A DNA stretch of 64,000 nucleotides from Phallusia mammillata (Eukaryota). Where the stretch lies: assembly GCA_965637545.1 (NCBI GenBank), contig OZ281497.1:19654001-19718000 (forward strand). Direction: 5' to 3'. A program made the position numbers and the translations under genes. The notes beneath the pieces were generated by a model, which worked only from the letters and a program-made list of their open reading frames with translations, was not told where the DNA came from and did no database searches. Shown piece by piece: positions 38,901-64,000 of the stretch (its first letter is position 1; the number at the start of each line of letters is the position of its first letter).

Positions 38901-39861
38901 TTTGGTCCGGTTTTACTTGGACCTGTCAATGCAAGCCTTGGCAATGGGTGAGTTTTCTAAGATATATCCATCGGTTTTTGTAAGCACAATACCGAATATA
39001 AACTTGTTTTAATAGTTGAAGGAGCTCAAATTAACAGCTGAAGTGGAAAAAATGTTTGTTGTATTTTTTCGTTTCAGAATCGACCTCAGCGCTGCTATCG
39101 GCTTCAAGAGACACATTCAAGTGTTGAATTACATGCTTTCAAACTGGCCAAGTGAGCCGGTTGCTGTTCCTAGAGCTCCGTCACCCGAAACTAATGATAC
39201 TGCAGGTACAGCTGGCTTTTTTACATGCATCCCACGCAAAACCTAGAGCATATAGAGGCGTGCATTGACAATTTTAACGTTTTAGAATTAGTTCGTTTTT
39301 ATTCTTGCCGGAATGTCTTGTAAATCTGTAAATTTTATATCAATTTTATGCACAAAAGTCTACATTAAATATACATTTGTTGGTTTATAGGGTGTTTACG
39401 TGTGGATTTCTTTATTTTCATTTTCTCACTCAACAGAAAATCGAAACTCCGTAAATCGGATGAGCTGTGTGAGCCTCACGCGACGTTTAAGCCGGGTGTT
39501 TATCGTGGATGAGAGCGAGGCTCGTACAGATGATGCCGCGTTGCCTAGTAACTGCACCGACAAACGAGGGACTCTGATCAGCATGGGACGGAGCGAGTCA
39601 TTGGTAGCAATATTGTATTTGTTTAAATATAGCGTGACCTTTGCGCCAACCACCAAATCATTAAAAAGGCATTTGTAGAAGTTCCATTTTGTTGACCAAG
39701 TTGGTTTCACCTTACTGCAAAGGGATAGAACGTGTTCTAATTTTGTTACATTTGGTTTTACGAATATTTATTTTTTTCAGACCAGTATACTGGAAACATC
39801 CGACCAGTTTGAAGATCCTCAACTCGATTTACGTAGGATGCAAGAATCAGAAGACTTGTGA
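29995..39861 (+). CDS. SYDE2: SYD-1/SYDE/RhoGAP100F-like Rho GTPase-activating protein with PDZ, C2 and RhoGAP domains (~1374 aa)
   Basis: Exons 29995-30261, 30358-32073, 32215-32587, 33174-33291, 33462-33639, 33922-34063, 34133-34287, 35232-35420, 35508-35654, 37516-37642, 38077-38169, 38650-38947, 39078-39151 (alternative donor at 39205), 39437-39603, 39781-39861; phases are consistent. Motifs: [24 protein letters not shown]; C2 ending [13 protein letters not shown]; [78 protein letters not shown]. The last two exons are less certain. Confidence 0.88.
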
Positions 39862-42090: not shown

Positions 42091-45000
42091 TCAGTTGACA
42101 AGCGAAACAACGATCTCATTGAGTGTCTCGGCAAAGTTTTCAAATGAAAATCGTTCGACGACACGAGCCCTCCCAGCTTCTCCCATCGTCTCCACGAGAT
42201 CCGGGTTCTGCATCAGTTTTAACCTGCAACCAAACAACATTTTGCGTGAAGCTTTAACGCTTGCATTTTTACGAGATTTGTACCAACGACGCTCCGATCA
42301 AGTTTTTAACGTCTGAATTTGGGTCAAGCGCCCCAGACCATTCGGCCAAATGGGTGGCATGATGCTTAAAACTTAATGAACTACTAAAGTAAGCCTAATG
42401 GGTAAAACCTTACTATACAACTGTGTGCTGTATGCTATTTTATCACTGCTTCACACTTGATACGGTTTTCAATAATTACGAAATAAAGCGGGACAAAAAA
42501 TCAAGATCTAAGTCGGGTTCAAGTTTTTATGCTTGGTATCTTGTCGATAAAGCAAAGCACCAGGCATTTGAATCTCTTTAATTTCTGTAACTCGAATATT
42601 CGTTTAGGCATGAGTCATGACTTGGGACTGGGGACCTTAAACAGTGGGTAAATTTGTTCTCAGGATACAATCAGACATGCTTTGAGGGTAAACTAAAGTG
42701 AGTAAATATTTTGCCGTTACAAAAAGCAGCCTCTCTCATAAACCGTTGCAACATTGCTATACGTGATTCACCAGTCACCCTTGTTTGTAAATGAATAGTT
42801 CAATATATTCACCTGACGGCTTTCTATTCGGATCAACAGTCATTTGCCGCTCGTATACACGACAAAGTTGCATGCAAATTTCTCAAGTACTCACATAGCG
42901 GTCGCAAAACTTTCTGAATTCGGAGGACGAAGAAATCCAGTTTGGCCGTCGGCAATTGTTTCAAGCGGTCCACCACTGTTTACCGCAATAACTGGTTTCT
43001 GGAAAAGTAACGTGCGGATTAAACAGTTGTGCCGAAAGCAAATTTGTTTTGTGCCTTGTTTATTTATTCATTCCCTATCTATAGTTTGTTTTTAGCAACT
43101 CAAGGTAAACAAGATGTATTTTTAACAACCAAAAAATAACTGCACTTAAATGAATGTACGCAAGTCGGTTTTATGCGGTCAAAAACACTTAGAAAACTAT
43201 TTCGATTCCGTCTATGCACTGAAGGACTTCAAGACCCACCGGCAGACGAGTCGATTGCGTTGTGCAACAACCAAGCTATTTTAGTCGTGCAAAAAAATCT
43301 GTCTGTTTATGCAAGCAGTTACGATTTTGAGGAAACCTATTAATGTCAGGATTGGTTTCTACCTAAAGTTATAAAAGTAACATGTTTTTATTACCAAGCA
43401 ATTGAAATTACACAAACGTGATTTTTTTATGTGAAAGGACAATAATAGTTCACGTCGTGCATGCGAATGTGTCAGTGCCCAATAAAAATGCAATTATTTC
43501 GGTCACGCATTATTCCTGAAAGCAAAAACGAAACAACATATCGGGCAATGGCAAAGTATGGTATGGTTCATTGTCTATACAAGTATGGTTCATTGTCTAG
43601 TTACTTCGCTGTACGATGGCGAAAACGAACCAAATACAATATTTTTACAGGATAAAAGTTCCTTTCTAATGCATAAATGACGAGTATAAAAGTTCCTTTT
43701 TTAGCTCGTTTTATTTTTTGTAGCAAGCATACACTCCGAACTGGGGGCTTATACATGAGATCTTTAACGCCGTGAGTAGCTGGTTTTACTGAGGGATGGT
43801 AAACCATTGGCCGTAACCATTTTCCAAGTACGTCATCGTGCTTGTAGCAAACAATACACCCTGCACTATGGGTTAATCCAGTGATTTTCAACAGGTGTTT
43901 CGCAAGAAATTTGTTAATTTGACTGGTGTTCGATGGAAAACCGGTCGAAATTCACTGGTTTATACAATTGGTGAAAAAAAGCTTTTCTTTCAGGAAAGTA
44001 GTCGCATTCAACAATTTTAATGTTTCGTCGGTTTGCTTGATTTATTGTAGTGTAATATTTAAATTCCTTGTAAAATGTTAAGGTGGTAATTGCGTTGGTG
44101 TTCCGCAAGATTATTTAACGCATTAAGTGTTTTGTGGCTTCCGAAACGTTGAAAAACAATGGGTTAATCCATACAACAAGTGTTCATTCCTACTATTTGC
44201 TAGTTTATCGCGATTCGCGAGGTTTAGTAATCAATACATAAATGATATGAGGTTAGGTTGTATAGATCCTCACCTTCAAGTACATTGCCTCGATGGGAAC
44301 GATGCCAAAATGCTCATTGTGTGGAGTGTAAAGTACACCAGTTGCACGGCGATACAAGGCCACCTTCTTCTGATTGGAAATGGACTGCAGAAATGACACC
44401 TTATCGTCTACTTTAAGCTTCTCTGCAAAACACAAAGGCAAAACTGCGGTAATAAATCGATTTCGTAAGGGAATCTAAAATTTACTTTTCTCAAACATGC
44501 TGAAACTTTTTTAAAAAGGTTCTCTAATACGTTAAATATTTAACACCAAGTTTCTCTAATCCACTGAACATTTAACATCAAGTGTCTTTAACCCTCTGAT
44601 TCCCATTACCTTACAAACATTTTGCATACTTTCATTTACCCCCAAAGGGACATGTTTACCAATTTAAGGTATTTTTATCGGTTGAGAACCTTAGTCTTGG
44701 GATAATTGCGTTTCAAAAACGAGTAAAATTTGGAAATGTCTAATAATAATGTGTCATTTTCAGCTACAGCGCACCACGATAACAATATGCGTACATAAAA
44801 CCATCGAAACCGAAAATTCACAAACATATAGGTATGGGAGTATATTAAGTTGGCTTTTACAACAATCTGTTAGTCTTGAACGTCACCTACATGTGCTGCA
44901 AATGGCGGCAGAAACATGGCAGTCAGCGAGGCGAACCACGACACAACATTTGACCTTAATCGGGTTTTTAAAAGTGCTGGATGTACAAGGTCATAGCACG

Positions 45001-48000
45001 AAAGCCCAAGAGCCGTAAATTACCCGTAATACAAGTTTGCGGTAACTTTTTACTGCTAGGCGACTTCTCAAGTTAAAACAATGCACATAGTTGTGTTTAC
45101 GGAAACGGTGGGTGAAAACTTGACCCTAAATGCGGCTTTGAAGAACGAAGCGAGTAGTCGCAAGACTTGTTTGTTGTTAGAGATTTGCAGTACAAACAAG
45201 GCTTAAAAGCAAAAATGAGAGCAATGCGACGGGTTACGTTCCTTTTTGTGACCATACACAAACCAATTACAAACATATTTTCTACAGTAAAAAATCACTT
45301 ATCAGACAGAATTGCCATAGAAAACAGACTGTGACTCGGTAGAGCTACTAACACCATGACGAGAATCAGAACTTCGCTTTCACAAGGGGGCGTAAAGAGC
45401 TGAATTTTTTTTATAAAATGGGTTGGGTTGGGAAATATTTACATAAAATTTTTACATTAGTAACTAATTTTTTGGGTTGGTTTTATCGAATTTTAAGTGC
45501 TAATACCTTACCCCGACCCTAATAGCCCTAACCGTGAGTATTTTTGGAGATATAACCAATCAAATTTGGGGGGTGATTCTCGTTGTGGTGTTAGTAGCTC
45601 TACCCTGTGACTCATGCCCCTAATAATAAAATACGCAAAAGCGACACGTATAAGAAAACTTGGGCTGTAAAAAATGCAAACAATGTGACTGCAATGAATG
45701 CTAATGCCCCGTGATTTGCAGAGAAGAACAAAAACAACAATAAAAGTATTAATCGCCTGTCTGTACGTCACTTCCGAAACGCGTTTTGACTGATATGTAA
45801 TCAAACAAGTCAATTTGTTCATACTCGGTACAAACCTATGAAGCAAACGCTTTAGGCATGTTTGACAAACAGGGTTACCGTTTTTCCGCTAATAGATCAT
45901 TTTGTTTATATCAAAAGCGATCTACATACTAAAAACCACATCTAAACAATAATTCAACATTTTCAACAATTGCACCCCTCTTTAAATCCCCATTTTTCAA
46001 AATCGTTGATTTTTGCATTACGGCAAGTTGCCGTAACACCAAACTGCAAAAAAGACGATTTATCGGATTACAAAACGCGGTTTCTTAAACACACGATTAG
46101 CGCCGAAGTACGTGCACTGTCTGTTTAAGCTGCTGTAATGCATCTCTTCGGGCAAGTCCCATGATTCAGAATTGTGGTTTCGTTACGAGCAAAACGGTTT
46201 CAAATTGCAAGGCCGACCAAAGCGGTTGTATTTCTTGTTTATCTGAATAAACGGAACTAGCCTTGTTTTTGCCCGGTCGTTTTACACATTGCCTGAAAAA
46301 CATGATTACTTCCCTCCATGCTACGACCAGTTGCCCTAATTTCCTGTGCACACGTGATAAACCGGCAGGAACAACGAATGTCGAAACATTTGCTTTAACA
46401 CAGACAGGACGATGTTAGTGTAAATACATAAATTATGCGATGGACGTCGATGGTTTGTTTATATGTGGCCATGATTATCCGCCTATGCTGTGAATAACAA
46501 TATCAAGGAAAGCAGATCACGCAAATGGGGCGTAAGCGCCGTAAAAGCACTGCTATTTGTTTAGTCAGAAGCATGACCCACATTGACATGGCGGTTACCA
46601 CCCACAACGGACAAACTTCTATGTTTTGATGCTTTAGTCGCTTTATAAGAAATTCTATCTTTCAAGATATGCCATTATCCTGACGAAGACGTCTCCTATG
46701 GGGCGCCGAAACGTCCATTATTTATGATAAAACTGCTAGAAGAGTAATACACCCGTATAAACACTTCTAAAGCGTTTCTAGATTAACTGTTGAAATATCG
46801 ATTGTCGTGATGTTCACAATAAAAGTCAACTTACCGGCCAATTTTGACAGCTCCCTGTAATGGTTAACGTTTTCCTCGACTCGTTGGTCGTAACCACCCG
46901 CCATCACAAGATGAACTTTTTTCCACTCGGCATCGGTGACCCGGTCGCGAACAAGATCTGCAACAAACAACTAAATTGTTGATGAGTGATGAACACGAGC
47001 AAAACAAGGTGAAATGGGAATTTTCACACGTCCTAAGATAGTTGCGCATGCGCAGACGTTGTTTCCCATGACATAGCATGATTGAACAAATGACTCGGAG
47101 ACTTGAGGTTTAAAAATAGAAAAAAAACGTGAAACATATGACTCCTTCGGGAGCGTTTCAAAAAGCGACCTATTTCCGATGGAATTTTTATGGCTAATAT
47201 GTGCTTCCGGTCTGTGAAATACTACCAATGTGTTTACCCGAAATATTTCGAGGACAATAGTAGAAACACCAAAGAAAACGTTGCTATAAAAGGAATTCTA
47301 TGAAGGGAGCATGTGATTTTACTGCGACACGCACGTCACAGACAAAATCCGACACACAAACTAAAAAAGCAAATTGCTATTTGAGGGTCACATAAGCATG
47401 GGTCGATTTATCAACCTCGCTATAGGATTGGCAAAAGGTGCGTTTTAACGTACTTTGCGGGTGGAAACAATGCGCGCATTTTACGTCGCAGAATCGGCGG
47501 CACCGTAAATGGCCCACAAAACTGTACGCGTTTGCCACAGGTGAAAAAGGTCAAATTACAAGCACAACCAAGTTACGCCTGGTTGCGCCGTGTAAACAGG
47601 ATGACACAAATTGGACTAAACAATTGAAAAACCAAGGAGTGTTTAATATTTGGCTTTTTGAATAGAATATGACAGAGCAAAATTTTTCACACTTTTCAGT
47701 CCCACAAATCTAAAATTTGGCAAATAATCTAAAAAAAAAACTTAGAAAAACGAAGGTCCTTATATAGTCGTTTGGCATGTGTCCAGTGTTATTTTTTTGG
47801 AGTTGATAGAAGGGTTGCGTAATGTGCTCAGGGTGACCAGAAATACTTGGCAGGGGTTATTAGTTAAATAAACAAGGCGGTTGCTAATGAAGTGAAGTGT
47901 TAGATTTGGTGCCGTTTCACCCACAACACGCACCCACGTAACAAGAGCAGGTAAAATTGTTGTCCGGTCATCATTTTTTTAGCGGTGTCACATTGTAAAA

Positions 48001-50245
48001 TGTCAGGTAAATTTTCTTTTCCTGCCAACCGTGGGCGACTTTTCTACGGTACACAACCTTACGTGGGCGAAATTAGGACAGGGCTCAGCTAGAAATAGTC
48101 AAAACACGATTCCCAAGCCGATGGCATGAAAATTGGCTGCCACGAAACGATAAATGGTTTGTGAAACCATGCTTGAGTGGAGTTTTCTGCTTGTCGTGGG
48201 TGCGACATTTCGAGAAGTTTCTTCTGAATGGGGACTATTGCCGAACTGGCGCCTTGAGGTTAATCAGCTTGTTTTTGGTATGTTTCATTTTTAATTTCGT
48301 TTTGTAAACTTGTTAAATTCTTGACCTTTTTATATAGCGTATCGTGTAACACAGCTTTAGCATATTTGGTACACTGTAAGCTAATATGCTACATACATAT
48401 CGCAGAAAACAACCTAAATAGAAAAAAAACTGTTCCAAATTTTCTGATAGCAAAACGTGCGCAACGAAAGGGCGCAAGTGACCTGTGTCCTGCCAAATAT
48501 CAGTAAAAGAGGGCAAAAAGTGTCTGGTTTACAAAAAGACTGACGATTTAATAGGGCGTGTGCTAAAAGCTAAATAAAAAAGTACCTAAAGCTTCTATCG
48601 CCAAGCTAAGATTCTTCTTGCGCTCGTAACGGTTAATTGAAAGGAAAACGTGCTCAGCTCGTGTCGGCAGACTGGACGAATCCAAACGGGTTGGCATCTG
48701 CATGACTTGATCGTAGTGCTTCGTATTAAGGCTTGGGTACAAAACGTGCGTCTCCATATCACGCAACGTCTTAAAAGTCTCTTTGAAGATTTTCTCTGGA
48801 CAAAACAAACACCAATCGTCATGATGACTGAAATTCAATTGGTATCACATGTCTTAATATATATGCAGTAAAAATACTATAAGTCAACCCAAACACTAAA
48901 AAAAGTATAGTATTCACAATTAATAGCGATCCACATATGCCTGCCAATACCAATTCTTTGTAAAAGCTTCTATTTAAGTTGGGTGGCTGAGCATTATGAA
49001 TAATGCTTGTTGATCCCATGAGTGAAAGTTCAAAGAAAGTTTAAGTTAGGATGACAAGATTTATTAAATACTTTCTCCCTGTAATTGATTTATTTCGTGA
49101 CACCAGTATGCCTTTGTTAAAGGTCAGAATCTGAAACATTTCTGGTTTGGAGGTAAAGCATATGGTAAATTGTTTGTTGTTATGGCATGCTCTGCTGAGC
49201 AAGCACTGGGGATTAACATTAAATTTTGCAATTACTGTCCGCTAACCTTTCACGACACTAAGTCCATCTACAATTAATAGGTGTGCATAAAGTATGTATG
49301 ACTAACCTGTAAATTGGCTGTTGACAAACAACATGTCCGACATGCCAGTAGATTTTTCTTCCAACCAATCAATTGGCATTCGATAAAGAGATTTAATTAA
49401 AGATGTTCGTTTTGTTAATAGCTGGTCTGGAAAGTGACAGTAGAAAACAATTTTGGCTTTGGTAAAGAACCTAAGAAAAGCAATACAAGCTTGTCATTTT
49501 GATTTTATAAAAGTACATATCTTTTCAAATTTCTTACTTCAAAAATGGTATACATGCAGAAATTTGATCACAAAATATGACATCTGGTTTCAGAGCTGAA
49601 ATCAATATGAGATAGAAAGAAATGTAAATCATTTTGAAGTAAGCCAAAAAGGCATGGAACATTCCAAACACACTGCGAGGAAGCCAGCCCCCGACCACAT
49701 TCACAGAAAATGTCCCATTCTTTGTTTCTGCAAAAAAACTCAAATTCAAATCATTGTTTTAGTACGTGACCATTCACAATTAAATGTCTTTAGTACATAT
49801 TTTGCGAATAGTGTCAACATAAGTATGTACACAGTTTAGGTGAATCATTACAGCTTTGTGTTTTTTAGGTTTTACATTTTAAATTTCATTCAATGTATTT
49901 ATTACATTGTATGATTGTGTGAAATTAAACATAATCACAATTCGCTTTTGTCTTTCATTTGTAAAAACTGAAATCGCTAAGAAATGTTTTTTACTAACAT
50001 AGCAATACCGTAAACCTATTAACAAAATTATTATATTATTTCTTTGCTAGCACAGCAACTGGAACCTAAATCAATGGGCAAAATGTAAAATCCAGACACA
50101 AACCTTCAAAGCAATGTTGTCGATCATGATGTCCGGTCATAAAACTGACCCGATGACCTTTTTCTTTGAGAGCAAGGGCGGCATCAACCACAAGACGTTC
50201 AGCACCACCGATGCCCAAATCAGGATGAATAAATACGATTTGCAT
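42091..50245 (-). CDS. ALG2: Alpha-1,3/1,6-mannosyltransferase ALG2 (404 aa)
   Basis: Exons 50245-50104, 49727-49538, 49470-49307, 48795-48586, 46957-46835, 44422-44274, 42998-42895, 42223-42091 (1215 nt). Motifs [85 protein letters not shown]. Confidence 0.96.
45338..45604. mobile_element. MITE with GG-starting TIRs and 9-bp TSD (Merlin- or Mutator-like), 267 bp
   Basis: 31-bp TIR GGTAGAGCTACTAACACCA(TG/CA)ACGAGAATCA (29 of 31 match); perfect TSD CTGTGACTC at 45329-45337 and 45605-45613. Confidence 0.9.
46672..46722 (+). ncRNA. Decayed minimal type-I hammerhead-ribozyme-like motif (Penelope-type)
   Basis: CUGACGA (46680-46686), hairpin GACGUCUC-CUAU-GGGGCGCC, GAAA (46708-46711), then CGUC. 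The first pair of stem I is a C-C mismatch. Confidence 0.4.
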
Positions 50246-50918
50246 TGCAAACGCGAAAAGTTTTTAATATACAACTGTACCTGCACAAAAGTGACACATG
50301 TTAGCACAACATCGTCGGCTAATTTCAACAAGCTGACTTAATAACTGGTTACAACGTGGCTGTTCACCACATAACATTCTGCCTTCAACTAAAGTCATGC
50401 CGCACTTTACTATCCTTTTCAGCTGATCGTTGTCACGAACGCATCACCGCGCATCGCAACTGGAGCGTGACGACAATTGCCACAACGTTTATCGGTATGA
50501 CGTCACCTTGGCTTTGCTGGTAATAATGAGTAACAACAGTGGATCCAAACGGCGACGGGGCCCAGAGAAAATTTGGCCAGTTAATACGAGCACCCCGACA
50601 AACCCATTTTGTTCGCATATCTTTTTGGTTTAAACATAAGTTTTTTTTAAACAGAAGCTAAAAATGTTTCTATTTTGCAACCGACGTGAACAAACGATTG
50701 TAGTCACAAATTATTTTTTTTACAAAGGAGGGTTTTGTAAAAGAAGATTGAAAAATATGCTGCTTTCATAAACAATGTGCTGCTTTTACAAAACCGAATT
50801 TCGATAGAAACTTGCTGTAATGTATTGTATTAGCAAACGGACACTTGAAAAAAGGCAACAAAACAGTTGGTAGAAAAATACGTTGTACAGTGGGTGAAGC
50901 TCCATTTATTTTTCATAT

Positions 50919-53900
50919 TTACTGGGTGAGAACCATCGGGGGCAGCCGTCCACCAGATGGCGGTCTTCTCATCAGTTGATCCTCCAAATCCATGATCTGC
51001 AAATGTCACAAAAGATGTCAAACTTAAATAAAGAACAAAAGTAGCAATAAAGAAGTGGTTCTCAACAGTTGGTAAATGTATCCCCAGTGTGAATTTGACA
51101 TGTTATGGAAGAAATTTTGTATGAGCATAAACTATATTAGACCTACTGGATTAGTGTGTCCAGATATTTGGTAAAAGATGGAGGTAAATGAGATAAAAAA
51201 AACGGAGAAAATAATGGAAAATAGGTATTTTAATTGTCACCTGATTTCGAAGTTTTCGTATCTCAGACTTTTGTATGTCAACGATACGGGGAAGTTCCTC
51301 CTCAGGATTTTGTCTTAGAACACTTTGTCCACCACTTCCTTCAGAGCCTGCAATTATAACAGCATTGTAGCACATACCAAATTATACCTATGTTTTAAAA
51401 CTGTTTCAACAAACAGTGCTGTAGTGACCTGTTGCAGCGGTATCAGATCGTTTGGTGGCCTTACTTCCAGTCATATTTTTAGATCTGTTGGTGCCAAGTG
51501 TTGCTTCGAGGTCGTGCACCTGTGTACGCGTGGATTTCAACTCACGCCTTAAGTCGTTTATCTCCTTGATGAGAGTAACATTCTCCTGTAAACAAGGTCA
51601 AAATGTTGGATAACAAGTTTAAAACATCGCAAAAAATATAAATAGTCCATTCTTTCGAGAAAGGGGATAGTTTTCATGAAATGTGCAAAACCAAAACTAA
51701 ACATCCGCAGTCAAAGGCTTAGAAGATAACGGGGGCAAAGACAGACAAATGTTCGTTTTGCACACTAAAAGGAAAACACTTTGAAGCCCTGGGTGTGAAA
51801 GCAACACAATATCTAGTACTGTGATATTATGTTTATTGTATTTAGATTTACCTGCATTATGCGGACGTTGTCGGCTCGGTGAATTTCTGTGTCTTTCGAA
51901 AGCTTCTTACGAAGGGAAGCGACCGAACGCTCAAGGTGTTCACGTTGGCGAGAATATTCTTTTTGAATGTCCGTGTCAACACTCGCCGACTCAGCCTAAC
52001 ATACATCATGTTGGGGTTTTCGCCTGGCTAAAATGCGAGTAGTAAAAGGCGCAAACTTTCCTCGAGGGAAGGATTTTCCAGTGCATGCAAACATACTTTC
52101 GTTCAAAAAACATTGATAAATGATTTTATTTCGAATGGACTGTCCGTATTTGCACTCACAAACGAATTAAATATTTCTGTTTTCCCACAAGTTTTGGCAT
52201 AACGTTTGAGTGAAGCTTAATTACTGTAGTAAGTTAATTTGACCAGGAGATCCCATCTTACATTTTACTCATATAGTAAGGCCTTTAACAAATTTCCGGA
52301 AGCAAGCAGTGACCCATCCATGGAACAGGGGTGACTAATATATTACTCATATTTTCAGTCGCAATATAGTTTGCCATGGCATTGTTTTCAAAGGTGACTG
52401 GGGCCAGGTCAGTGCGTTTCCGTCTCAAAATAACTGCACTCCAAAACGAAAGAACCTGGTTGAACCAACGTCAAGGAGTTCTCACTCCCGAGATAATTGC
52501 TTGTTGAGTGCTTTTGTAACTGTCAAACACCCCTATTTGTCATGACTGTCATATCCATAGTAACTAAACAATACTAATTGAACATGCCACATTCCCTTTT
52601 ATGACAGTCAAAACGAGTATCTTTATAACAGCCGCGGCTTTATAATTTCCGAGTTAGCAATCTTACCACATCGTCATGCACGTACGCCTCGTATACTGAT
52701 TTGATGGATTCCTTGAGTTTCTTAGGCTCTTGGAGGAATCCCACGCAGTTGTGGATGTCAGTTTTCATTCTCTTGCTTACAGCCTCTGCATCACGAACCT
52801 GAAAAATAGGTATGCGTAAAATAGGAATTTCTGCTTTTCGGCAAATGCTCATGCCATCATCAGTGATATGAAGGCCACGTCAATTGCATCCATTTATATA
52901 CACTTAGTCGCATAAAAGAAACGTTTGAACAATAAAGCATGTCGCTTTTTACGTCTATTTGGGCCGTTATTTTTACCATTAAACTTATGAACAGATCCGT
53001 ATATAGTGTTCCTAAGCCTAATTGTTTTGTTTAAGCGCGATATCATTGTCGCGGTTTCCAAACAAAGCCCAAAAGTCAAGTTGAATCCACAAAATTTAAA
53101 GAAGGTTTTTTAGGAGAGGTTTGTGTGCCCTATTTAATGAAATGTGTGCTAAAATATTTACATGCTGACCACATTTTTCAGTCAGACGAAGCTTTTTGAA
53201 CTTTCAGGAACTTACCCTCTGTCGCTCATAGTGGAGCTCTTTGTCTGTAGCTCTCAACTTTTGCTTCAGTTCAGTAATGGTCAAATCGAGCTGTGTGTTC
53301 TGTTTGTGGAAGCGTTCCAATTCACTCTCCATTTCCTACAGACATGAGCAATTCTTGTAAACTTGCAATAAGAACGTATGATTGTGTGTTCCATAGAAAT
53401 CGTTATAAACGTACCTGGATCTGCTCCTTCATTGCTTTAATGTCGTTTTCTCGCGGTTCGATTTGTTTCTTCAGTTCTTTGATCTTGTAGTCGAGGACAA
53501 ACTTGAACTTCTCAAGTTCCTGATTCTTTTTCTTCAGATCGTAGATGCGCTTTTCCTGTTTACAAAAAAGCGCTAACATATAACACATCGCAACAACGAT
53601 ACACTTTGACAAAAATTTTGGAGAAAGTAAAGATATTAAAATCAAATCATAAGCCTGGTGTATGGAATAAAAAAACGAAACAAAACTCCGCATACCTTGT
53701 CTTGTATTGTTTCGTCCCTTTCCTGAATTTCCTTCTTCAGACCGTGAATGTCCTTCTCCAAGGACTTAATAACGTTTTCCAGTTTCTGCTTTTCCTGCTG
53801 CATGGTCTTGATTTCTTCGTTCTTGCTGTCAATCTCTTTGTTCAAGCTGTTAAACTGCACAATAATACAAAAAAAGGTGTTTCATAATTAAATAGATAAA

Positions 53901-56900
53901 GACATGTGAAGAGCCACAACAGTTGCAGCCGTTTATGTCCACTTGAGTCACGTAAAAGATAGAATATTTTCATCATTAAACTTACGAACAGATCCGTATA
54001 TAGTGTTGCAAATTACCTCTACATTTCAACGTTTTACTTGTCTTTTCATTTTGTTATACTTCACATTTATCACTACCTTCAGTTTCAACTTGTATATTTT
54101 ACAATTATGATACGAGTGTATGAATCAATAGCAACAAACCACTAAAAATAACTGTTGTTGGCCAAAACGATGTGGGAATAAACATTAGATGGCGCCCTAC
54201 CTTTTTGCGCATAATTCCCGACTCGCCCTTCAGTCTCATGTTGGTCTCGATCTCGTCGCGCAAACGTCGTTCATACTTGTTCTTGATGTCGAGAATCTCG
54301 CGGTCGGCGTCTTCCTCGATCTGGCGCTTGGTTTCTTCGTATTCGCGCTGTTGCTGTCGTGCCTCGTCATTCGCCTGAGAGACAGGTTGAGCACATTAGC
54401 CTTTCAAGCCGACCCGCTATTGAATCACGACCATCTGGTCTGGATCGCAGCGTGCCAGTTATTAGATTCACATGCAAGGGTGACGGAGATGGAACGACTC
54501 AGTGAGCAACTGATATGCCAAAGGTCAAAGGTCAGCCGTCGCGGGGCACTGATATGACGTCCTGGGTAAGGGTTGCTTTGATAAAGTTTAAACGGATAAA
54601 TAGAGTTAGTGTAGTTGGCCGAACCAGTGCCTGGGTACAAGGTACGTGTGGTGTTATAAGAGCAAAACATGTTTGGCTGAGCACTGTGTTAACCATAAGA
54701 CGCTCTTTGCCCGGCGGATTGCTACACTTTGGATGATTCCTAAAAGTTAGGAAGGTTGGCATAAAAGCACCAACGGTCAATCAGTCGCAAGTTTTATCGC
54801 AGGAAATTAAAATCCATCAAGCCTGAACTTCCTAACAACGCAGTTTACCTGAACAGTGCCTATCTATTCAACAGTTGCTTGTTTGTTAAATGGAATGCAT
54901 GTCTTATTATCGTATTACTAAAGATCTAACAAACAATGTGAAAAGTTTTTAGTTTTCTGTTTGTTCCAGCACAAATTACCTGTTCCAGCTGAGAGCTCTT
55001 TTCCTGAAGTTTGGTTTCGTAAAACTCGGTAAGCTCCTCTAGTGCTTGCTCCTTACTCTCATCCGCATCCTGGAGCTGTCTCTCATAATCTTCCTGCATC
55101 CGCTGTGACTTGGCTTGCAACTCCTGGTATTTCTCATATTCCAACATCAGCTTCTGGTTGTTGGTAGATTCTGTAGTAATATTATCATGTAGGTCTCATA
55201 ACAGAAACTTGTGGTATTGAGTGTAAAGTACAGGTTTAAAGGTGCCAACTATGCAAGAATCTATAGCGGGGCATAATCGTGTTTTCTTGATGACAATTGT
55301 TTCGCATTAGGTGCGACAAGACATGGTGATTTGTAATAAACTACCGACGAAAAAACTTGTGTCCGGGTTGAAAGAAAATATTCCTTGTGTTTCAAACGAC
55401 TAGAATTGTATGTCGGATCAGGCTTTTCAAAGCGATTTATTTATATAATTTTACAGGAATGTGCATGCAGACGGAATGGGTATTAATTTATTACGAACAG
55501 CCATACATTGGGCAGATCTTCACGAAATACCGTCAGCCAAATTGTATTATTCGTTAAACTTTTGGGCCAATCTATGGCTTTTTAATAACATTTTCGGATT
55601 CGGACCGAAAAAAGTTAGATCCTGGTTACACTCACCAGGCACCACCATTAAGATTGTCATACCGTCGGTTTGCAAAAAAAAACTTAATAAATGTATAAAT
55701 CTCACCCAGGTCTTGCATGTCCTTTGAGTGTTTATCGACGACCTCAGCCAACTCTTCTTCATGTTTTGCAATTTCCTTTTCCTTCTCAGTTTTCAAAACT
55801 TGATTTTTGGTTTTCAAGCTTTCCATTTCCTGTAAAACACAATAAATAAAAAAAAATGCACGAAAGCACAACAAGAAGAAGTTGTAAAAGTCACTTTTTT
55901 TTACTTTGAAATCGGGTCATTTAAATTTTTGGATTTGAGACAAATGAATGAATTTCTACCTGGATAAATTTCTCAGTTAGTTCCTTGATCTTTTCATTGT
56001 AATTCATATCTTTCAGTCGAAGTTGGTATTCGTTTTCCATCTTCAGCTCTTCAACCCTCGTTTTCAGTTCCGACATCAGTTGATTCTAAGGTGCAAAAAA
56101 GACCATTGATCCAACAGGCCCTTTAGCATGAATTTTTCGCAATTTGCAACAAATCTTTGAAAAATACCTTTTCTTCGAGATCGGACTTGGTGATGAGAAT
56201 CTCCTCAGCGTAGGGGACTTCCCTGTCGTGTTTTACTCCCCTCCCTTCTTTGTCAGAAACTCGCCAGATCGCCAAACACGCGTCCTCGGACACAGTCACC
56301 AGGAACTGATCGTCGTAAGTTATTTTCATCTGGAATCAAAATCATGAGGTTAAAAGGTTTGCGTGCCATATTTCTGAGGTTTTGAAATGTCATGTTAGGT
56401 TTTGTCTGGTTTAAAATCAAATACAGGTAAAAGCATTAACCGCAGGTTACCCCGAAGAAAGTGAATTTCTGTGCATTTAAACATACTTGATTTACACGTT
56501 TTGGATTTTGGTTTGAAATTCGTTGAATATTAAAAATAAAAAGATTATGTAACTATTTGTGACCTATACATCATCTTACGATTTAAATAAAACTAATCCT
56601 GTATTATGTGCATTTGTTTTGCAAACCTTGGTTATTTGTGATGCGTGTCCCTGATGTTCCGTCCATTCACCAACATCAGTGAGTGGATATTTGATGGAAC
56701 GAAGAGCTCCGGTCATTGTACCACAGAAGAGCATTCTCCCGCTATGGGACATCGCCACTTGGGTGAGGGTCATTCCACTTGCATCCACAGTTCTCAGGAT
56801 CTACAAAAAAATTGATATGTTTTGGCATATTGACAAATTTGTACAAGGTTTGTTCGAAGCGATGCTGTTTTATATAGCGCGGCATCTTAGCCATCTTCCA

Positions 56901-59900
56901 AAGTCAAAACTTGTGACCAGCCTACGTTTAAGTGTAATGCAATAAGGAAGTAAAGCCGTAAGCGATTTAATCTACCAAAGCACATAACGCTTTATATTAC
57001 GGTGTTGCTGCAGCGCGTTCAGCCATCATCCACCAATTGCGCCCGCCACTTTTTTGCCATTTTATAACGTTTCAACGTTTAAATTTCCAACTTGGTGATT
57101 GTTTAAATTTCCAACTTGGTGATTAATTGTGTTGCTCAACTCAACTCAACTCAACTCAAGCATTAACAAATTGTTGTTAATAACAATCCCGTAATATATA
57201 AAGAGTAGCCAAGTCGTACTGAAAAGTGTACCAGTGGTAAGTAAAAAGTTTTGTTGTACAAAACTACTGGTCGGGAAATTTAGCGATTTGAACAAACCTG
57301 CGATTCGGTGATTTCCTTGATAGTTTTGTCTGAGCCAACAGCGTATGTGTGCTTGCCGCTAGGTGACACTGCAACTCCGGAGTAAGCGCAAGTTTTTAGC
57401 ACGACCTCGTTCATCCGCTTGGCGGCAGTAGGGGACCACTCATACACAGCGCCGTCCATTCCACTGGAAATCAACTTGCTGTCGTCGGCACTCCAAGCGA
57501 TCGCACGAACCTGTGAATACGGAGATTGTGAAAAAAACTTGAACAATGCATTTAGCACACTGTTCGGTCGCTTTGATTAAAACTTTTTTGTGCAGGATAT
57601 CTTTTAGATTATCTTTGATTTTAACCCTCATAAAACACCACAAGTTTATATGCCCATACCAACTAAAAATGACCACAAGCTGAATTCTACAAATCTGAGT
57701 AAAACACTGTTAAGGGATTAGACCAGTTGGTTTACTTCATAAAAGATTGGTAAACAATAAAGGATTTCGGAAATATGTACAATATGTCTACTCTGTAACA
57801 CAAAACTTATAACACTAAACAGTGGGACAACTTGCATATGCAAAAATCAATTTCCACTAGTTGCATGCCAAATAGGCAAATTATTAACAACATAAAAAAT
57901 GTATGCTGCAGACACAACAAACCTTGCCATTGTGACCCTTTAGGTTGGAGACATTTTCAAATGTTGTGGAAGAGTAAACTTGGATAACATTTCCATGCAC
58001 GGCAGCAAACAGATGTCCACCATTGCTGAATGCACACTAGAAAAAAAGTATGCCTTTACAAATACTGTCGAAGTACTTTAATAATACTGAATTTAATAAA
58101 TCAAAGAGCTATGAATTTAAAAGTCATTTGCTATTACAAAGATGTTTTTAGTTTTACCTCTCTGCACCCTCTGATAGTAAGCTCTTTGAACATCCGGATG
58201 TCATCAATAAGAATGTTCATCATTCTTAACTTGTCACTGAAGCCAACCAGTATATAGAGACCAGAGGGATGCAGAGCAATGCTGTATGCCTCTTCTTGGA
58301 AAACCTTGTATAGTTCAAGGGTGCTGGGAACAAAATATTTTCTTATTCCTTAGCAAAAGTATTTTTTGTTGTTTCATATAAATCAGATACAACCAGTGGT
58401 GGGATTCAGCCAGTTCGCACCAGTTCTATAGAACCATCCCACGAATTTTTATGACATCAGCGAACCGGTTAGCATTACTGGTTGCTGTCAATAAACTGAC
58501 TGAAAATATGACTTTGTGATAGAACCGGCTGACAAAAAATTGAAATCTCACTACTGGATACAACCACTGGGAAACGGCTAGTAACTTTATTATTAAACAA
58601 AAAAATGGTAAAATTACTCACTTGGTTTCATAATTCCATATTCTGACTGATCGATCCAGTGAGCATGTTGCAATAAGCGGTTTGCGAATACAGACGTCAA
58701 GACCAGTGATGCTGCTGCTATGAAAGGAGTGTGTGAGTGGTTCAAAAGTTGCTTGTTCACCTGCAAATAAACACAGATGTCAAGAAAATCATACTGAGTT
58801 AAGTAAAGTAAAGCATAGGAATAGGGTTTTTCAATAAACAAGGCATTCATTCATTTTATGAGAAAAAAAATATTTACAAGTTCTATCAAGACAAGAATGG
58901 ATTTCACGTTAACCCACCTTTTCCCAGATCAGCAGAAGATAATGCAATTCCATACAGCTGACTATGGTCAGTAGCTGCCACCAACATTTCCTCACTTGGA
59001 CTTACTGTCAATGCCACAATTAACTGATTTTCAGCTTGTGTAGGATCAGTGCTATGTGGGTCGGGTGGTATCTGAAAACATAATTTCCAGGCATTCAATA
59101 AAATAGATGACATCAAAACATTTTAAATGTACAAAGCTTACTTTAACAATTCTTGTTTTGCGATAGAAGTCTTTCTCGTCAGTCTTCTCAAACAAGTGCA
59201 CAGACCCTGTCCCACCAGCACAGGCAAAACCTTTAGAATGAGCAACGACTGATGTGATTTGGGTTGTGCCAAGTCCACTACCTGATGCACTCACAGCATC
59301 CTCAGGAATCACACTTGTACTGGCCCTGTTGGACATGTTTATTGCAAACACTTTCGCATTCATATGAAAGAAAGTCGTATGTGCATCAACTGACCTTATG
59401 CTGTTGGTCTCAGCAGTAGATCCTGCAGGCAGAGCAGCATGAAATTCAGACTTTAGTTCTCCATTTTCAAACAATAGCAATCTTCCAGTGTCACTTCCCA
59501 CTACAACACGCTCATCAGAAACCTGTTAATTGATTTATAATCATGCATTTATACTGGTAAATTACTTCAAAAAAGCTGGTAAAAACGGCCTACCCAGGCA
59601 TGTGACAGGTAGTTTTGTGGTTCCATTTTTTGAAAGCCAAACTGCTTCAGGTTGCCCTCAGCATACCGAAAAAGTTTGAAGATGTGATTTCCAGTAACAC
59701 AAATTTGAGTGTTGTCTTGAGGATTAAAGCTAACCTGTTATTACAGGACATAGTTTTAAATATATTCACGTAGTGTCGCTCAAGCCCAAAACAAAGTATA
59801 ACTCGAGTTTACCTGATAGACTGGCTGGCCAGTTTGGTTTGTGGTTTTCATTGTAGCCATAATTTTTGACTTTTCCCAAGCCCAATACACAAGCATCCAT

Positions 59901-60411
59901 TCTGGTCTAGCCCCTTGAGCTATTAGGTACTTTGAGTCTGGGGAAAATGCAAGGCTCACAAATTCATGAGTTTGTAGATCGGGTGCAGTCAGAGTCTAGA
60001 TTTAAAAAAGGAATATAAAAACACTTAGTAAGGAAGTAAAACACCTTAATACGATTTGTTACCTTCCTCTTCTTTGATTGATCGTGCAACATATCATACA
60101 CAGTGACAGTTGGCTTTTCACCTTTTTCCGCAATTGCCACATAACGTCTGTTAGGACTGAGAGCTATTGCAGTCATACCTAACACATATGTTTAATATTA
60201 GTTTATATTTAACAAAAAGCATAACAGCAAACTTACCTTGTGATTTTTCGGATCCAGGTATAAATCTCTGCTGCTTTTGATCAATGTTAAATCGAATCAC
60301 CTGGTTGCCAGATGGAAAGACTATCGTCTGCTCATCCAGATAGCTAATGCTACCTGTTATGCTGGGCCGAAGCCCGAACATGTGGTGTGATTGTGCCACT
60401 GCTATGGCCAT
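50919..60411 (-). CDS. CFAP57: Cilia- and flagella-associated protein 57 (WDR65), complete, about 25 exons
   Basis: First exons 60411-60237, 60178-60063, 59995-59813, 59734-59594; last exon 50996-50919. Motifs [142 protein letters not shown]. Confidence 0.96.
54522..54534 (+). promoter_or_regulatory. Perfect DR1 nuclear-receptor response element in a CFAP57 intron
   Basis: AGGTCA-A-AGGTCA, exact consensus, inside a GC-richer intronic block (~54390-54730). Confidence 0.45.
57077..57159. repeat. 24-bp tandem duplication followed by a (CTCAA)5 microsatellite
   Basis: GTTTAAATTTCCAACTTGGTGATT x2 at 57077-57124; CTCAA x5 at 57135-57159. Confidence 0.9.
58394..58556. mobile_element. hAT MITE, 163 bp, in a CFAP57 intron
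   Basis: Imperfect TIRs CAGTGGTGGGATT and AATCTCACTACTG; perfect 8-bp TSD GATACAAC at 58386-58393 and 58557-58564; internal GAACCGG motifs. Confidence 0.88.
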
Positions 60412-61113
60412 GATGAAGCACAGCTGATTTGCTGGTAAACTAATTTGCACAAATCAGTTTTCCTAAATCTTAACTCATACACTGTAACAAGTCATGCAGT
60501 AATTTCAATCATGGCTGCATTTTAGGAAAGATTGTTAACATAATTTTTTACATTTATAAACAGAACAAAATTCAGTGTGAAAACCACCAAATTGGTCCCT
60601 GTATTTATTTGTTTTACAAAAACAACTGCATTTTGCCTTTATAAGCATCAACTGTGTCTGAAAACAATACAAAAACGGGAGACAAAACAGACACTGATGA
60701 TGCTTATAAAAGCGAGTGCATTTGTTTTATAAAACCAATAAAATATAGCAACCGATTTTGTGCTTTTCACACTGACTTTTCTTGATCTGATTTTAATGAC
60801 CCTGAATCGTCGCAGTTGCTTTATTTGAAATAAGACTTCATTAATAAGAAAAGATTTACCACGATACACAGAGCTGTTAAGCAATCTTAAACTGCTGTAT
60901 TTAAAAATAAGTTGTTAGAGTGAAAATTTTCAACCATTTACAACAAAGATCTTTTGTATTTTTTTTTCCTTTTATAAATTCTGCAATTTCATGTACAAGC
61001 AATACAAACGAATTAATTGACAACCAAACACTTAGATTCAAACATATTTTAGAAAAAAATCATTCAACATCTCCGATTCTCCGTCCACAAGTTAAAATCT
61101 AAAGTAAATTTTA

Positions 61114-61127
61114 GTTGCCATGGTCAC
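61114..61127. promoter_or_regulatory. RFX X-box upstream of CFAP57
   Basis: GTTGCCATGGTCAC, near-consensus with an imperfect 3' half-site, ~700 bp upstream of the ATG of a motile-cilia gene. Confidence 0.65.
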
Positions 61128-62392: not shown

Positions 62393-62400
62393 TATAAAAA
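62393..62400 (+). promoter_or_regulatory. Candidate TATA box of the neuropeptide gene
   Basis: TATAAAAA preceded by GC-rich CGCGCC, ~270 bp upstream of the ATG; strong acceptor TTACTTTGCAG at 62601-62611 in the 5' UTR. Confidence 0.45.
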
Positions 62401-62667
62401 CGTCGAAGAGCATCCCATAAGATCATGTCTTCAGTCTTTGGACAGCATGGGCGTTCGTGGTAGAAAAGAAGAGCACAGCCTATATGAATTGAGGAATATT
62501 GTTAAGCACCAACGCTTAGACCAAGAAGAAAATTACAATATATACAAAACTATTTTATTTTCTGTGTATTTATCACTAAAATGTCGAATTTTAACCTTTT
62601 TTACTTTGCAGAAAAAACATTTTTTATTTATTAAACTATTGTCGAAAATTGATATTTAAAAAACAAT

Positions 62668-63680
62668 ATGAGTATGCATCACAAATCAAACATGTTCCAA
62701 TGGCTTCTCGCTGCGGGATTTCTACTTGTTGCCGTTTCAGCTGCCGACGCCGATCATTGGACAAAGTGGTTTAAACCAGGAATGCAAAATACGGGCGGAA
62801 AGAGGTATTAAAAAAAACTCTTTTTGTTCGTAAATTTTGCAATACGTCAAAAATGTTCTTTTTTGAATAAAAACAACAACAGCAACAAATTTGTCCCGAC
62901 AGTTCAATTTATCATGCAAATTATAACTTAACAGAAATGTGACTTTAAATAAAGTCGTTTTCTTAAAAAATAACCCTAAACCCGATCTAAGAGTCCCTAC
63001 CCGACTTTCGACTCTGATATAAATTCCGGCCGAACCATTTTTGTTTTTAGCTGAACAAATTTTAACAACAAAAGAAAATTATTTTAATTTGTAATCTCAT
63101 ATTAATTTTTTCTTTACAGGAGCACAAACGATTTAAATATGGAAAGGCTGTTTAACTACAGAATAAGCAGGCCGACCATAGACAGTGCGGGTCTCTACGA
63201 CAAATTTGATCACGCTATTACCGCCGAACTTATGAAAACAAGCCGAGACAATCTAATGGGACTGCTCCGGGTAAGTTTTGCACCTCTTTAAAATTTAAAT
63301 TGAAACAAACAGCAGACCTTTAAATTGTTTATCGTTTTATACAGGCGTTGGCGCAGGACGCAGTTGCAAAAGAAAACGGCGAATATTCGGTAAGGAAAAC
63401 AATCTTTATTTTATGAGCGCTGTACTTCCAGTGGACTCTTTATATGCGTATTTTCGGTTTTCAATTTTTCTCAAATGAAAAAACATTCACGCACTTTTAG
63501 AGCAGTGTTTTACCAATTTGTCCTTACACTCACTTTCTGTGAAACAAACGTTTTAGTTTGACAGACAAAAAGTGTTTTGTGAACATTAAAACTCTTTAGT
63601 TGGGTTGCGGTAGTTTTAATAATATTAAATAATCTTCTCTTTCACAGAACAACGTCGATGAATGGACAAATCGAGATTAG
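62668..63680 (+). CDS. GnRH-family (GnRH-X-like) neuropeptide precursor, 121 aa, 4 coding exons
   Basis: Exons 62668-62804, 63120-63270, 63345-63389, 63648-63680 (GT-AG, in phase). Translation: MSMHHKSNMFQWLLAAGFLLVAVSAADA-DHWTKWFKPGMQNTG-GKR-STNDLNMERLFNYRISRPTIDSAGLYDKFDHAITAELMKTSRDNLMGLLRALAQDAVAKENGEYSNNVDEWTNRD*. It has a signal peptide, an HW.....PG core, an amide-donor Gly and a dibasic site. Confidence 0.85.
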
Positions 63681-64000
63681 ACCTGTTTCAGGAAATCCAA
63701 GCCGAATTGAAACCCCGTTGCCGTCCCTTCGCTATTGACTTTGCACATCCATTCGGTCGTTATAGTTTAAGGAAAACATTTCGTAACATTCCTTCGTATT
63801 TATATTGTATCGTAACTGTGCTTAATATTACCGTGCTGTGATCTGCTCACCGCATACTGTTTACCCGTTGTACTTGTTACTTATTGCTTATATTTATGAG
63901 ACTGATTCGCATTTATCCGCCCTTTCTTGCAATGCGAATCTTTTCAATACAACTCTTGCCAATCACTCTGCCTTGCTTCGTTACGACAGGAAGCCAGAAT

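What the first reader, a model, noticed from the sequence alone, without database searches (positions are those of the whole stretch)
62668..63680. Hidden GnRH-X-like neuropeptide gene whose mature peptide starts with Asp rather than pGlu
Seen: a 4-exon, 121-aa precursor absent from the ORF track because every exon is under 60 aa. It has a hydrophobic signal peptide ending A-D-A, then DHWTKWFKPGMQNTG (62752-62796), then G-K-R, with the Arg codon split by intron 1. Known: GnRHs follow pQHWSxxxxPG-amide, and Ciona GnRH-X (recalled as pQHWSNWWIPGAPGYNG-amide, reported as inhibitory) is a C-terminally extended form. This peptide keeps H2, W3, W6, P9, G10 and a terminal G-amide, with conservative S4T and W7F changes. 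Inference: it is a 15-residue GnRH-X ortholog that cannot form the pyroglutamate cap. It is cationic (two Lys) and encoded in a single copy. Loss of pGlu1, a residue important for GnRH receptor activation, could mean an antagonist or modulator, or a co-evolved receptor. If the signal is cleaved earlier (after A26), the D-A dipeptide could be trimmed by a dipeptidyl peptidase to give the same N-terminus.
Basis: partly seen in the sequence, partly recalled or inferred. Interest (0 to 1): 0.85.

Follow-up and report, generated by a model that had tools for sequence, protein, structure and literature searches.

The report
Sea-squirt GnRH-X gene without pyroglutamate cap
This is a real, spliced and expressed small hormone gene in a sea squirt, the counterpart of Ciona's inhibitory GnRH-X peptide gene, and its predicted 15-residue peptide begins with aspartate, so it cannot carry the pyroglutamate cap found on every tunicate and vertebrate GnRH in the reviews read here.

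Summary
A 4-exon, 366-nt coding sequence (62668-62804, 63120-63270, 63345-63389, 63648-63680, + strand) encodes a 121-aa precursor. Its order is signal peptide, DHWTKWFKPGMQNTG, G-K-R, then a 73-aa tail.

- **Transcription.** Assembled contigs from four sequencing studies skip exactly the three predicted GT..AG introns and show no base differences. The mRNA and the Asp codon (GAT, 62752-62754) are therefore real.
- **Orthology with Ciona GnRH-X (NP_001034971).**
  - The peptide sits in the same place, directly after the signal peptide.
  - Intron 1 splits the Arg codon of GKR after AG in both genes.
  - Exons 2 and 3 are 151 and 45 nt in both genes.
  - Both genes lie in one conserved block: GnRH-X, CFAP57, a GT4 glycosyltransferase and a SYDE-type RhoGAP.
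- **Sequence searches.** Two very large protein searches and a metagenome scan found no other relative. The precursor is too diverged for sequence search alone.

Not shown: the signal-peptide cleavage site, the mature peptide, any receptor activity, and whether Asp1 is restricted to this lineage. I rate it a new variant of a known kind and of moderate interest. The literature I could search describes no GnRH-X outside Ciona. Earlier agents of this scan call the genome Phallusia mammillata; I did not verify that.

The parts
62611..62667 (+). 5' UTR. Two RNA contigs begin at 62611 and 62612, directly after a pyrimidine tract and AG (62610-62611).
   Evidence: table 8; sequence.
62668..62751 (+). 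Predicted signal peptide, 28 aa, ending A-D-A. It has an n-region with Lys6 and a hydrophobic core at F10-V23.
   Evidence: hydropathy peak 2.8. The ungapped alignment places A-D-A|D opposite Ciona I-E-A|Q. The cleavage site is inferred, not shown.
62752..62796 (+). Predicted mature peptide DHWTKWFKPGMQNTG (15 aa). The Asp1 codon GAT is at 62752-62754.
   Evidence: RNA contigs show no other letters here.
62797..62804 (+). Gly (amide donor), Lys, and the first two bases (AG) of the Arg codon. The third base is 63120.
   Evidence: The same AG|gt split occurs in Ciona at L001 10118-10119.
62805..63119 (+). Intron 1 (315 nt, GT..AG, phase 2).
   Evidence: joints, seen in 4 runs.
63120..63270 (+). 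Exon 2 (151 nt), the associated peptide. It carries the ME...NYR motif in the same register as Ciona.
63271..63344 (+). Intron 2 (74 nt, GT..AG, phase 0).
63345..63389 (+). Exon 3 (45 nt, the same length as in Ciona).
63390..63647 (+). Intron 3 (258 nt, GT..AG, phase 0).
63648..63680 (+). Exon 4 coding part (10 codons plus TAG).
63681..63955 (+). 3' UTR as far as the RNA contigs reach (63900-63955).
   Evidence: table 8.
50913..60411 (-). Neighbouring CFAP57 gene, head to head with the peptide gene. This is a synteny anchor, not part of the gene.
   Evidence: exons 73-100% identical to L001 34010-47612; best PDB hits are CFAP57 chains in 8j07 and 9d2f.
42091..50245 (-). GT4-family glycosyltransferase gene (ALG2-like; the name is inferred). 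Synteny anchor.
   Evidence: One search matches to L001 49154-55301, whose product carries Glyco_transf_4 and Glycos_transf_1.
30598..39828 (+). SYDE-type RhoGAP gene. Synteny anchor.
   Evidence: One search matches to L001 58726-80114, whose product carries C2_SYDE and RhoGAP.

Best explanation
The region holds the ortholog, in an ascidian that earlier agents call Phallusia mammillata, of the Ciona gene for GnRH-X ('GnRH-like hexadecapeptide').

Shown:
- It is transcribed and spliced from four coding exons into a 121-aa prepropeptide.

Inferred from the sequence and from the mass-spectrometry-defined Ciona product:
- Signal peptidase cuts after Ala28.
- A prohormone convertase cuts after Lys-Arg.
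- A carboxypeptidase removes Lys-Arg.
- Peptidylglycine amidating monooxygenase converts the exposed Gly into an amide.
- The product is DHWTKWFKPGMQNTG-NH2, plus a 73-aa associated peptide with no dibasic sites.

The peptide keeps His2, Trp3, Trp6, Pro9-Gly10 and the extended tail ending in Gly-amide. It carries a free N-terminal Asp in place of pGlu, and Thr in place of Ser4. An Asp cannot cyclise, so the peptide should be uncapped and carry about +2 net charge (my hand estimate).

Its most likely role, by analogy only, is that of Ci-GnRH-X: a neuropeptide of larva and neural complex that modulates or partly blocks the receptors for the decapeptide tunicate GnRHs rather than activating them.

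The confidence given (0.8) is for the gene, its orthology and the general precursor logic. I put the exact 15-residue Asp-started product at about 0.6 and the modulator role at about 0.35.
For: **Gene and transcript**
- Intact reading frame and canonical splice sites.
- Spliced contigs in four studies with no sequence differences.
- Several same-species runs hold none of it, which fits restricted expression.

**Orthology**
- The Ciona precursor P0001 (NP_001034971) has the same order: signal, single peptide, GGKR, tail.
- BLASTP aligns 43 residues across signal end, peptide, GKR and ME..NYR at 37% identity.
- Ciona coding exons are 119/151/45/21 nt, against 137/151/45/33 nt here. The first intron is identical in position and phase, AG|gt inside the Arg codon.
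- With the register fixed by exon length, exons 2+3 share 11 of 65 residues (shuffle P = 0.0024).
- The four-gene block GnRH-X / CFAP57 / GT4 transferase / SYDE RhoGAP is shared.

**Peptide**
- 5 of 10 core identities with Ci-GnRH-X and 6 of 10 with tGnRH-1, QHWSDYFKPG.

**Function of the Ciona peptide**
- Partial antagonist, expressed in larva and adult neural complex.
- pGlu1 sits in the receptor core, contacting R1.35, K3.32, Y6.51 and F7.39.
Against: - No peptide has been detected.
- Signal peptidase could equally cut after Ala25 (V-S-A|A) or Ala26 (S-A-A|D), which would give an N-terminally longer peptide.
- No signal-peptide predictor was available.
- Beyond the GKR the two precursors are barely alike. 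A local alignment is not better than shuffles.
- Neither precursor reaches Pfam's GnRH threshold: the Ciona peptide scores 9.9 bits against 18.5, and the window exon gives no hit.
- Only two species could be compared, so the direction of the Gln/Asp change and its spread are unknown.
- Gene orientation relative to CFAP57 is inverted, and Ciona has an extra 940-aa gene in between.
- Receptor pharmacology is entirely unknown in this species.
Confidence: 0.8

Rival explanations
1. Same gene and orthology, but a different mature product. Signal peptidase cuts after Ala25 or Ala26, so the secreted peptide is ADADHW... or DADHW... (17-18 residues). It either stays that way or has an X-Ala dipeptide trimmed by a dipeptidyl peptidase.
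For: V-S-A|A and S-A-A|D both satisfy the small-residue rule at -3 and -1, which is established knowledge of signal peptidase. The hydrophobic core ends at V23, so all three sites lie 2-5 residues after it.
Against: The ungapped alignment with Ciona puts A-D-A|D exactly opposite I-E-A|Q, the junction that precedes the pGlu of the isolated Ciona peptide. An acidic residue sits at -2 in both. A 5-residue c-region is the more usual length.
Confidence: 0.25
2. The gene is the GnRH-X ortholog but has left GnRH signalling. Loss of pGlu1 and Ser4 reflects relaxed or redirected selection, and the peptide (or the tail) acts on an unrelated receptor or has no signalling role.
For: Two of the four N-terminal consensus residues that all twelve described ascidian GnRHs keep are changed. 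The precursor evolves so fast that exhaustive sequence searches find nothing.
Against: The frame, signal peptide, amidation and cleavage signal, His2-Trp3, Trp6 and Pro9-Gly10 are all intact, and the gene is expressed in many runs. A gene free of constraint would not be expected to keep exactly these positions.
Confidence: 0.15
3. Chance resemblance: an unrelated small secreted protein that happens to contain HW..W..PG.
For: The peptide core is short. Pfam's GnRH model gives no hit.
Against: Shared microsynteny of four genes, identical intron position and phase, identical lengths of exons 2 and 3, and the same precursor layout. The pattern is expected 0.003 times per window.
Confidence: 0.02

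Closest known systems
Ci-GnRH-X (GnRH-like hexadecapeptide, NP_001034971 / Q2AC14) of Ciona intestinalis
   Same: A single peptide copy directly after the signal peptide. His2, Trp3, Trp6, Pro9-Gly10, and a C-terminal extension ending in Gly-amide before GKR. Four coding exons with the same intron positions and phases, and exons 2 and 3 of identical length. The same chromosomal neighbourhood (CFAP57, GT4 transferase, SYDE RhoGAP).
   Different: Asp1 in place of Gln1/pGlu, Thr4 in place of Ser4, Phe7-Lys8 in place of Trp7-Ile8. The tail after Pro-Gly is 5 residues rather than 6 (15 versus 16 residues in all). It should be cationic rather than near neutral. The gene is inverted relative to CFAP57 and lies 2.2 kb from it rather than 23 kb. 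The associated peptide is only about 17% identical.
Tunicate decapeptide GnRHs (tGnRH-1 to -11; Ci-gnrh1, Ci-gnrh2)
   Same: The HW....PG core. 6 of 10 residues are identical to tGnRH-1 (QHWSDYFKPG), including Phe7-Lys8.
   Different: The reviews describe those genes as encoding several decapeptide copies per precursor. All have pGlu1 and Ser4 and end at Pro-Gly-amide.
Vertebrate GnRH precursors
   Same: The layout: signal peptide, one GnRH, GKR, associated peptide.
   Different: Decapeptide with pGlu1. No sequence similarity in the associated peptide. A different intron position (my own knowledge, not tested here).
Echinoderm corazonin-type peptide ArCRZ (HNTFTMGGQNRWKAG-NH2)
   Same: Described as an ortholog of arthropod corazonins, a family paralogous to GnRH. 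It has 15 residues, ends in Gly-amide and has an uncapped N-terminus. A free N-terminus is therefore not unprecedented among GnRH/corazonin-type peptides.
   Different: It belongs to the corazonin branch, has no HW..PG core, and is not orthologous.

Membership tests
GnRH-X (Ciona GnRH-like hexadecapeptide) orthology group | Orthologous locus (conserved neighbours) | tested here: met
   CFAP57, GT4 transferase and SYDE RhoGAP are adjacent in both genomes. Orientation is inverted, and Ciona has one extra gene in between.
GnRH-X (Ciona GnRH-like hexadecapeptide) orthology group | Same exon-intron plan | tested here: met
   Phase-2 intron inside the Arg codon of GKR in both. Exons 2 and 3 are 151 and 45 nt in both.
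GnRH-X (Ciona GnRH-like hexadecapeptide) orthology group | Single GnRH-like peptide after the signal peptide, with Pro9-Gly10 followed by an extension that ends in Gly-amide | tested here: met
   Sequence. Amidation is inferred from G-K-R.
GnRH-X (Ciona GnRH-like hexadecapeptide) orthology group | Detectable precursor sequence similarity | tested here: inconclusive
   Pairwise BLASTP gives 33 bits over 43 residues. The fixed-register test gives P = 0.0024. Database-scale searches find nothing.
GnRH-X (Ciona GnRH-like hexadecapeptide) orthology group | Partial antagonism of tGnRH action at GnRH receptors | not testable with these tools
   Known only for Ciona.
GnRH peptides (chordate type) | N-terminal Gln cyclised to pyroglutamate | tested here: not met
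   Codon 62752-62754 is GAT (Asp) in the genome and in RNA contigs of four studies.
GnRH peptides (chordate type) | His2-Trp3-Ser4 | tested here: not met
   His2 and Trp3 are present, but position 4 is Thr.
GnRH peptides (chordate type) | Pro9-Gly10 with the Gly amidated as the C-terminus | tested here: not met
   Pro9-Gly10 is present but followed by five more residues. The amide falls on Gly15, as in Ci-GnRH-X.
GnRH peptides (chordate type) | Pfam PF00446 match above the gathering score | tested here: not met
   No hit for the window exon. Ci-GnRH-X itself scores 9.9 bits against an 18.5-bit cut-off.

The most novel reading that the evidence does not exclude
GnRH-X is not a Ciona oddity but an old ascidian gene, shared at least by the Ciona and Phallusia lineages. 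In this lineage it has become a naturally uncapped GnRH-type peptide. The free, charged Asp1 replaces the pGlu that docks in the receptor core. That would make it either a purer endogenous antagonist of the decapeptide GnRHs or the ligand of a co-evolved receptor. Either way it would be a natural structure-activity experiment on position 1 of GnRH.
Probability: 0.3. Interest if true: 0.7.

Novelty: new variant of a known kind. Interest (0 to 1): 0.55.

Why it matters
Reviews present Ci-GnRH-X as a unique, species-specific product and as the only endogenous partial antagonist known in a peptide hormone system. A second, syntenic ortholog shows that the gene predates the split of two ascidian families. 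It also identifies what selection has kept: His2, Trp3, Trp6, Pro9-Gly10, the extended Gly-amide tail, GKR, and an ME..NYR motif in the tail. What it has let go is pGlu1, Ser4, and positions 5, 7 and 8.

pGlu1 contacts four residues in the receptor core. A natural Asp1 form is therefore a ready-made probe for how antagonism and agonism are encoded in this family.

The finding also shows that small, fast-evolving peptide genes missed by sequence search can be recovered through synteny and the exon plan.

Tried and rejected
**Searches that found nothing useful**
- The search for homologous proteins with the 121-aa product found nothing at E <= 10.
- I reached the Ciona precursor only by searching with the published Ciona peptide placed in the window's precursor frame.
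- Exact look-up of NP_001034971 found no contig. Its allelic variant XP_078485624 did.
- Exhaustive phmmer of the Ciona precursor against 1.84 billion representatives returned only itself.
- A two-species profile against 5.8 billion proteins returned only the Ciona protein.
- A metagenome scan gave 339 pattern matches, none confirmed.
- No third species could be added, so the direction of the Gln/Asp change is open.

**Tests that failed or were irrelevant**
- Pfam gave no usable GnRH hit.
- Local alignment of the post-GKR tails is not better than shuffles. Only the register fixed by exon length gives a signal.
- An alignment of separate exon pieces was misaligned by MAFFT and was dropped.
- The bacterial promoter/terminator scan does not apply to this eukaryote.
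- My first Ciona exon-3 coordinates were off by one base. They are corrected.
- A first composite regex had the wrong spacing. It is corrected.
- A PDB search to name the GT4 gene found nothing, and one reference was out of frame.

**Limits**
- No signal-peptide predictor is available here.
- Species identity (Phallusia mammillata) comes from earlier agents' notes and was not verified by me.

Full report
**1. What is in the sequence**

Positions 62668-63680 (+) contain four short coding exons: 62668-62804, 63120-63270, 63345-63389 and 63648-63680. They join in frame to 366 nt, giving 121 aa plus TAG. Every intron is GT..AG and has a pyrimidine-rich acceptor.

No exon ORF reaches 60 aa. The ORF list shows them as 47-aa and 50-aa fragments, which is why the gene was invisible to an ORF track.

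The product reads as follows:
- a 28-residue N-terminal segment with a basic n-region, a 14-residue hydrophobic core (9-residue hydropathy peak 2.8) and A-D-A at its end;
- DHWTKWFKPGMQNTG (62752-62796);
- G-K-R, with Arg split as AG|G across intron 1;
- 73 further residues without any dibasic site.

The GnRH-like core pattern occurs once in all six frames of the window. The core-plus-processing pattern is expected 0.003 times per shuffled window.

**2. It is transcribed and spliced as predicted**

Thirteen public runs of one organism hold part of the stretch. Eight runs from three studies hold 0.37-0.44 of the sampled words. By my hand count of 31-mers lying within the exons, about 0.43 is what an mRNA covering only the exons would give.

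I laid contigs from four runs of four studies on the window:
- Every run shows the three joints 62804/63120, 63270/63345 and 63389/63648, with GT..AG ends.
- Three single contigs of 643-664 nt span the whole coding sequence.
- No other letters or indels are reported, so the GAT Asp codon is not an assembly error.
- Transcripts run from 62611/62612 to about 63900-63955.

Four further runs with the same species label hold essentially none of it. That fits stage- or tissue-restricted expression, although contigs cannot quantify this.

**3. Relation to Ciona GnRH-X**

The published Ciona peptide is pQHWSNWWIPGAPGYNG-amide. It was isolated from neural tissue and is a partial antagonist at Ci-GnRHR-1 and -3. 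It is expressed in the larva and the adult neural complex.

Its precursor (P0001, NP_001034971, 111 aa) has the same layout as the window's product: signal peptide ending I-E-A, one peptide, GGKR, then a tail. BLASTP aligns 43 residues at 37% identity, running from the end of the signal peptide through the peptide and GKR to a shared ME...NYR motif.

The allelic form XP_078485624 is encoded on a Ciona chromosome record, fetched as L001. There the coding exons are 10001-10119, 10522-10672, 11017-11061 and 11191-11211.

| Feature | Ciona (L001) | This window |
|---|---|---|
| Coding exon sizes (nt) | 119 / 151 / 45 / 21 | 137 / 151 / 45 / 33 |
| Intron 1 | after AG of the GKR Arg codon | after AG of the GKR Arg codon |
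| Introns 2 and 3 | phase 0, same aligned positions | phase 0, same aligned positions |

Because exons 2 and 3 have identical lengths, the tails can be compared without gaps. They share 11 of 65 residues, with shuffle P = 0.0024 for identities and 0.019 for score. A free local alignment of the tails is not significant.

**4. Synteny**

A tblastx comparison of the window against L001 matches three neighbouring genes:

| Gene | Window | L001 |
|---|---|---|
| CFAP57 | 50913-60411 (-) | 34010-47612 (+), exons 73-100% identical |
| GT4 glycosyltransferase | 42091-50245 (-) | 49154-55301 (+) |
| SYDE-type RhoGAP | 30598-39828 (+) | 58726-80114 (-) |

The CFAP57 assignment is supported by the best PDB matches, CFAP57 chains in 8j07 and 9d2f.

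Read in the direction of CFAP57, the gene order in Ciona is GnRH-X(+), a 940-aa gene(-), CFAP57(+), GT4(+), SYDE(-). Here it is GnRH-X(-), CFAP57(+), GT4(+), SYDE(-).

The peptide gene thus lies 5' of CFAP57 in both genomes, 23 kb away in Ciona and 2.2 kb here, but in inverted orientation. A single inversion of the two-gene block (GnRH-X plus the 940-aa gene) would explain this. The window ends at 64000, so I could not check it.

Microsynteny, the identical exon plan, the identical precursor layout and the conserved peptide core together make orthology the only reasonable reading.

**5. What sequence searches say**

- The 121-aa product finds nothing among 5.8 billion proteins.
- The Ciona precursor finds only itself among 1.84 billion representatives read exhaustively by HMMER.
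- A two-species profile adds nothing.
- A metagenome scan adds nothing.
- Pfam's 10-position GnRH model gives 9.9 bits for Ci-GnRH-X against a cut-off of 18.5, and no hit for the window's exon.

GnRH-X precursors therefore evolve too fast for sequence-based discovery. Within the library I could search, only three papers mention GnRH-X, all reviews from one group, and none describes it outside Ciona. The Phallusia/GnRH search listed 14 titles. None is about a Phallusia GnRH; I opened only one of them, which names Phallusia only in its reference list.

**6. How it most likely works**

Shown: the gene, its splicing, its expression, and the encoded sequence.

Inferred from established prohormone processing and from the Ciona product:
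- Signal peptidase cuts after A-D-A. This is homologous to I-E-A|Q in Ciona, with an acidic residue at -2 in both.
- A convertase cuts after K-R.
- A carboxypeptidase trims K-R.
- The exposed Gly is converted to an amide.
- The product is DHWTKWFKPGMQNTG-NH2.

Compared with Ci-GnRH-X, the peptide keeps His2, Trp3, Trp6, Pro9, Gly10 and the Gly-amide end. It makes conservative changes at position 4 (Ser to Thr) and position 7 (Trp to Phe). Its Phe7-Lys8 matches tGnRH-1.

Asp cannot form pyroglutamate. The N-terminus would carry a free amine and a carboxylate side chain, and with two Lys and the amide the net charge would be about +2 (my hand estimate; the computed figure, +0.85, is for the free acid). 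Ci-GnRH-X is near neutral.

In solved GnRH-receptor complexes, pGlu1 contacts R1.35, K3.32, Y6.51 and F7.39 in the core. All twelve described ascidian GnRHs keep pGlu-His-Trp-Ser. The Ciona ortholog is already a non-activating partial antagonist. The most economical guess is that this peptide also modulates or blocks, rather than activates, the receptors of the decapeptide GnRHs. This is analogy, not evidence.

An uncapped N-terminus is not unknown among GnRH/corazonin-type peptides. Starfish ArCRZ, described as an ortholog of arthropod corazonins, is a 15-residue Gly-amide peptide beginning with His.

**7. Rivals**

- **Earlier signal cleavage.** A cut after Ala25 or Ala26 would give a longer peptide, possibly trimmed by a dipeptidyl peptidase. 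This is plausible and cannot be excluded without SignalP or mass spectrometry.
- **Functional drift.** The gene may have left GnRH signalling. This is possible, but the exact retention of the processing sites and core residues argues for constraint.
- **Chance resemblance.** Excluded by sections 3 and 4.

**8. Verdict**

It is a new variant of a known kind. It belongs to the GnRH-X orthology group by locus and gene structure. It fails two of the features that define chordate GnRH peptides (pGlu1 and Ser4) and, like Ci-GnRH-X, is C-terminally extended.

Interest is moderate. The finding removes the "Ciona-specific" label from GnRH-X and offers a natural position-1 variant. Product, receptor and taxonomic spread are still open.

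The organism name (Phallusia mammillata) is taken from earlier agents' notes and was not checked here.

Noticed in passing
window 62596-62612: Two independent RNA contigs begin at 62611 and 62612, directly after a pyrimidine tract and AG (ttttttactttgcAG). This looks like a 3' splice acceptor 57 nt upstream of the ATG. It could be a spliced-leader trans-splice site or the end of a 5' UTR intron rather than a transcription start. Ciona has a similar tttttatAG about 50 nt upstream of its ATG (L001 around 9941-9950).
   Followed up: partly
L001 10001-77998: The Ciona record gives the gnRH-like hexadecapeptide gene (isoform X2) a 68-kb range that engulfs CFAP57, the GT4 transferase and part of the SYDE gene. 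All exons needed for the 111-aa product lie within 10001-11211. The long range probably comes from a read-through or chimeric transcript model.
   Followed up: partly
L001 15067-33060 (-): A 940-aa Ciona gene with no Pfam hit lies between GnRH-X and CFAP57. It has no counterpart in the 2.2-kb gap at window 60450-62610. Its ortholog may lie just beyond the window's end if a two-gene block was inverted.
   Followed up: no
window 63140-63160 and L001 10540-10563: An ME...NYR motif sits at the same distance (+7 to +14) after GKR in both precursors. It is the only conserved island in the associated peptide apart from L-L at the exon 2 end and L-A at the exon 3 start. Its function is unknown.
   Followed up: partly
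window 50913-60411 (-): CFAP57 is very strongly conserved between the two ascidians, with several exons 96-100% identical at the protein level. This contrasts with the neighbouring peptide gene.
   Followed up: partly
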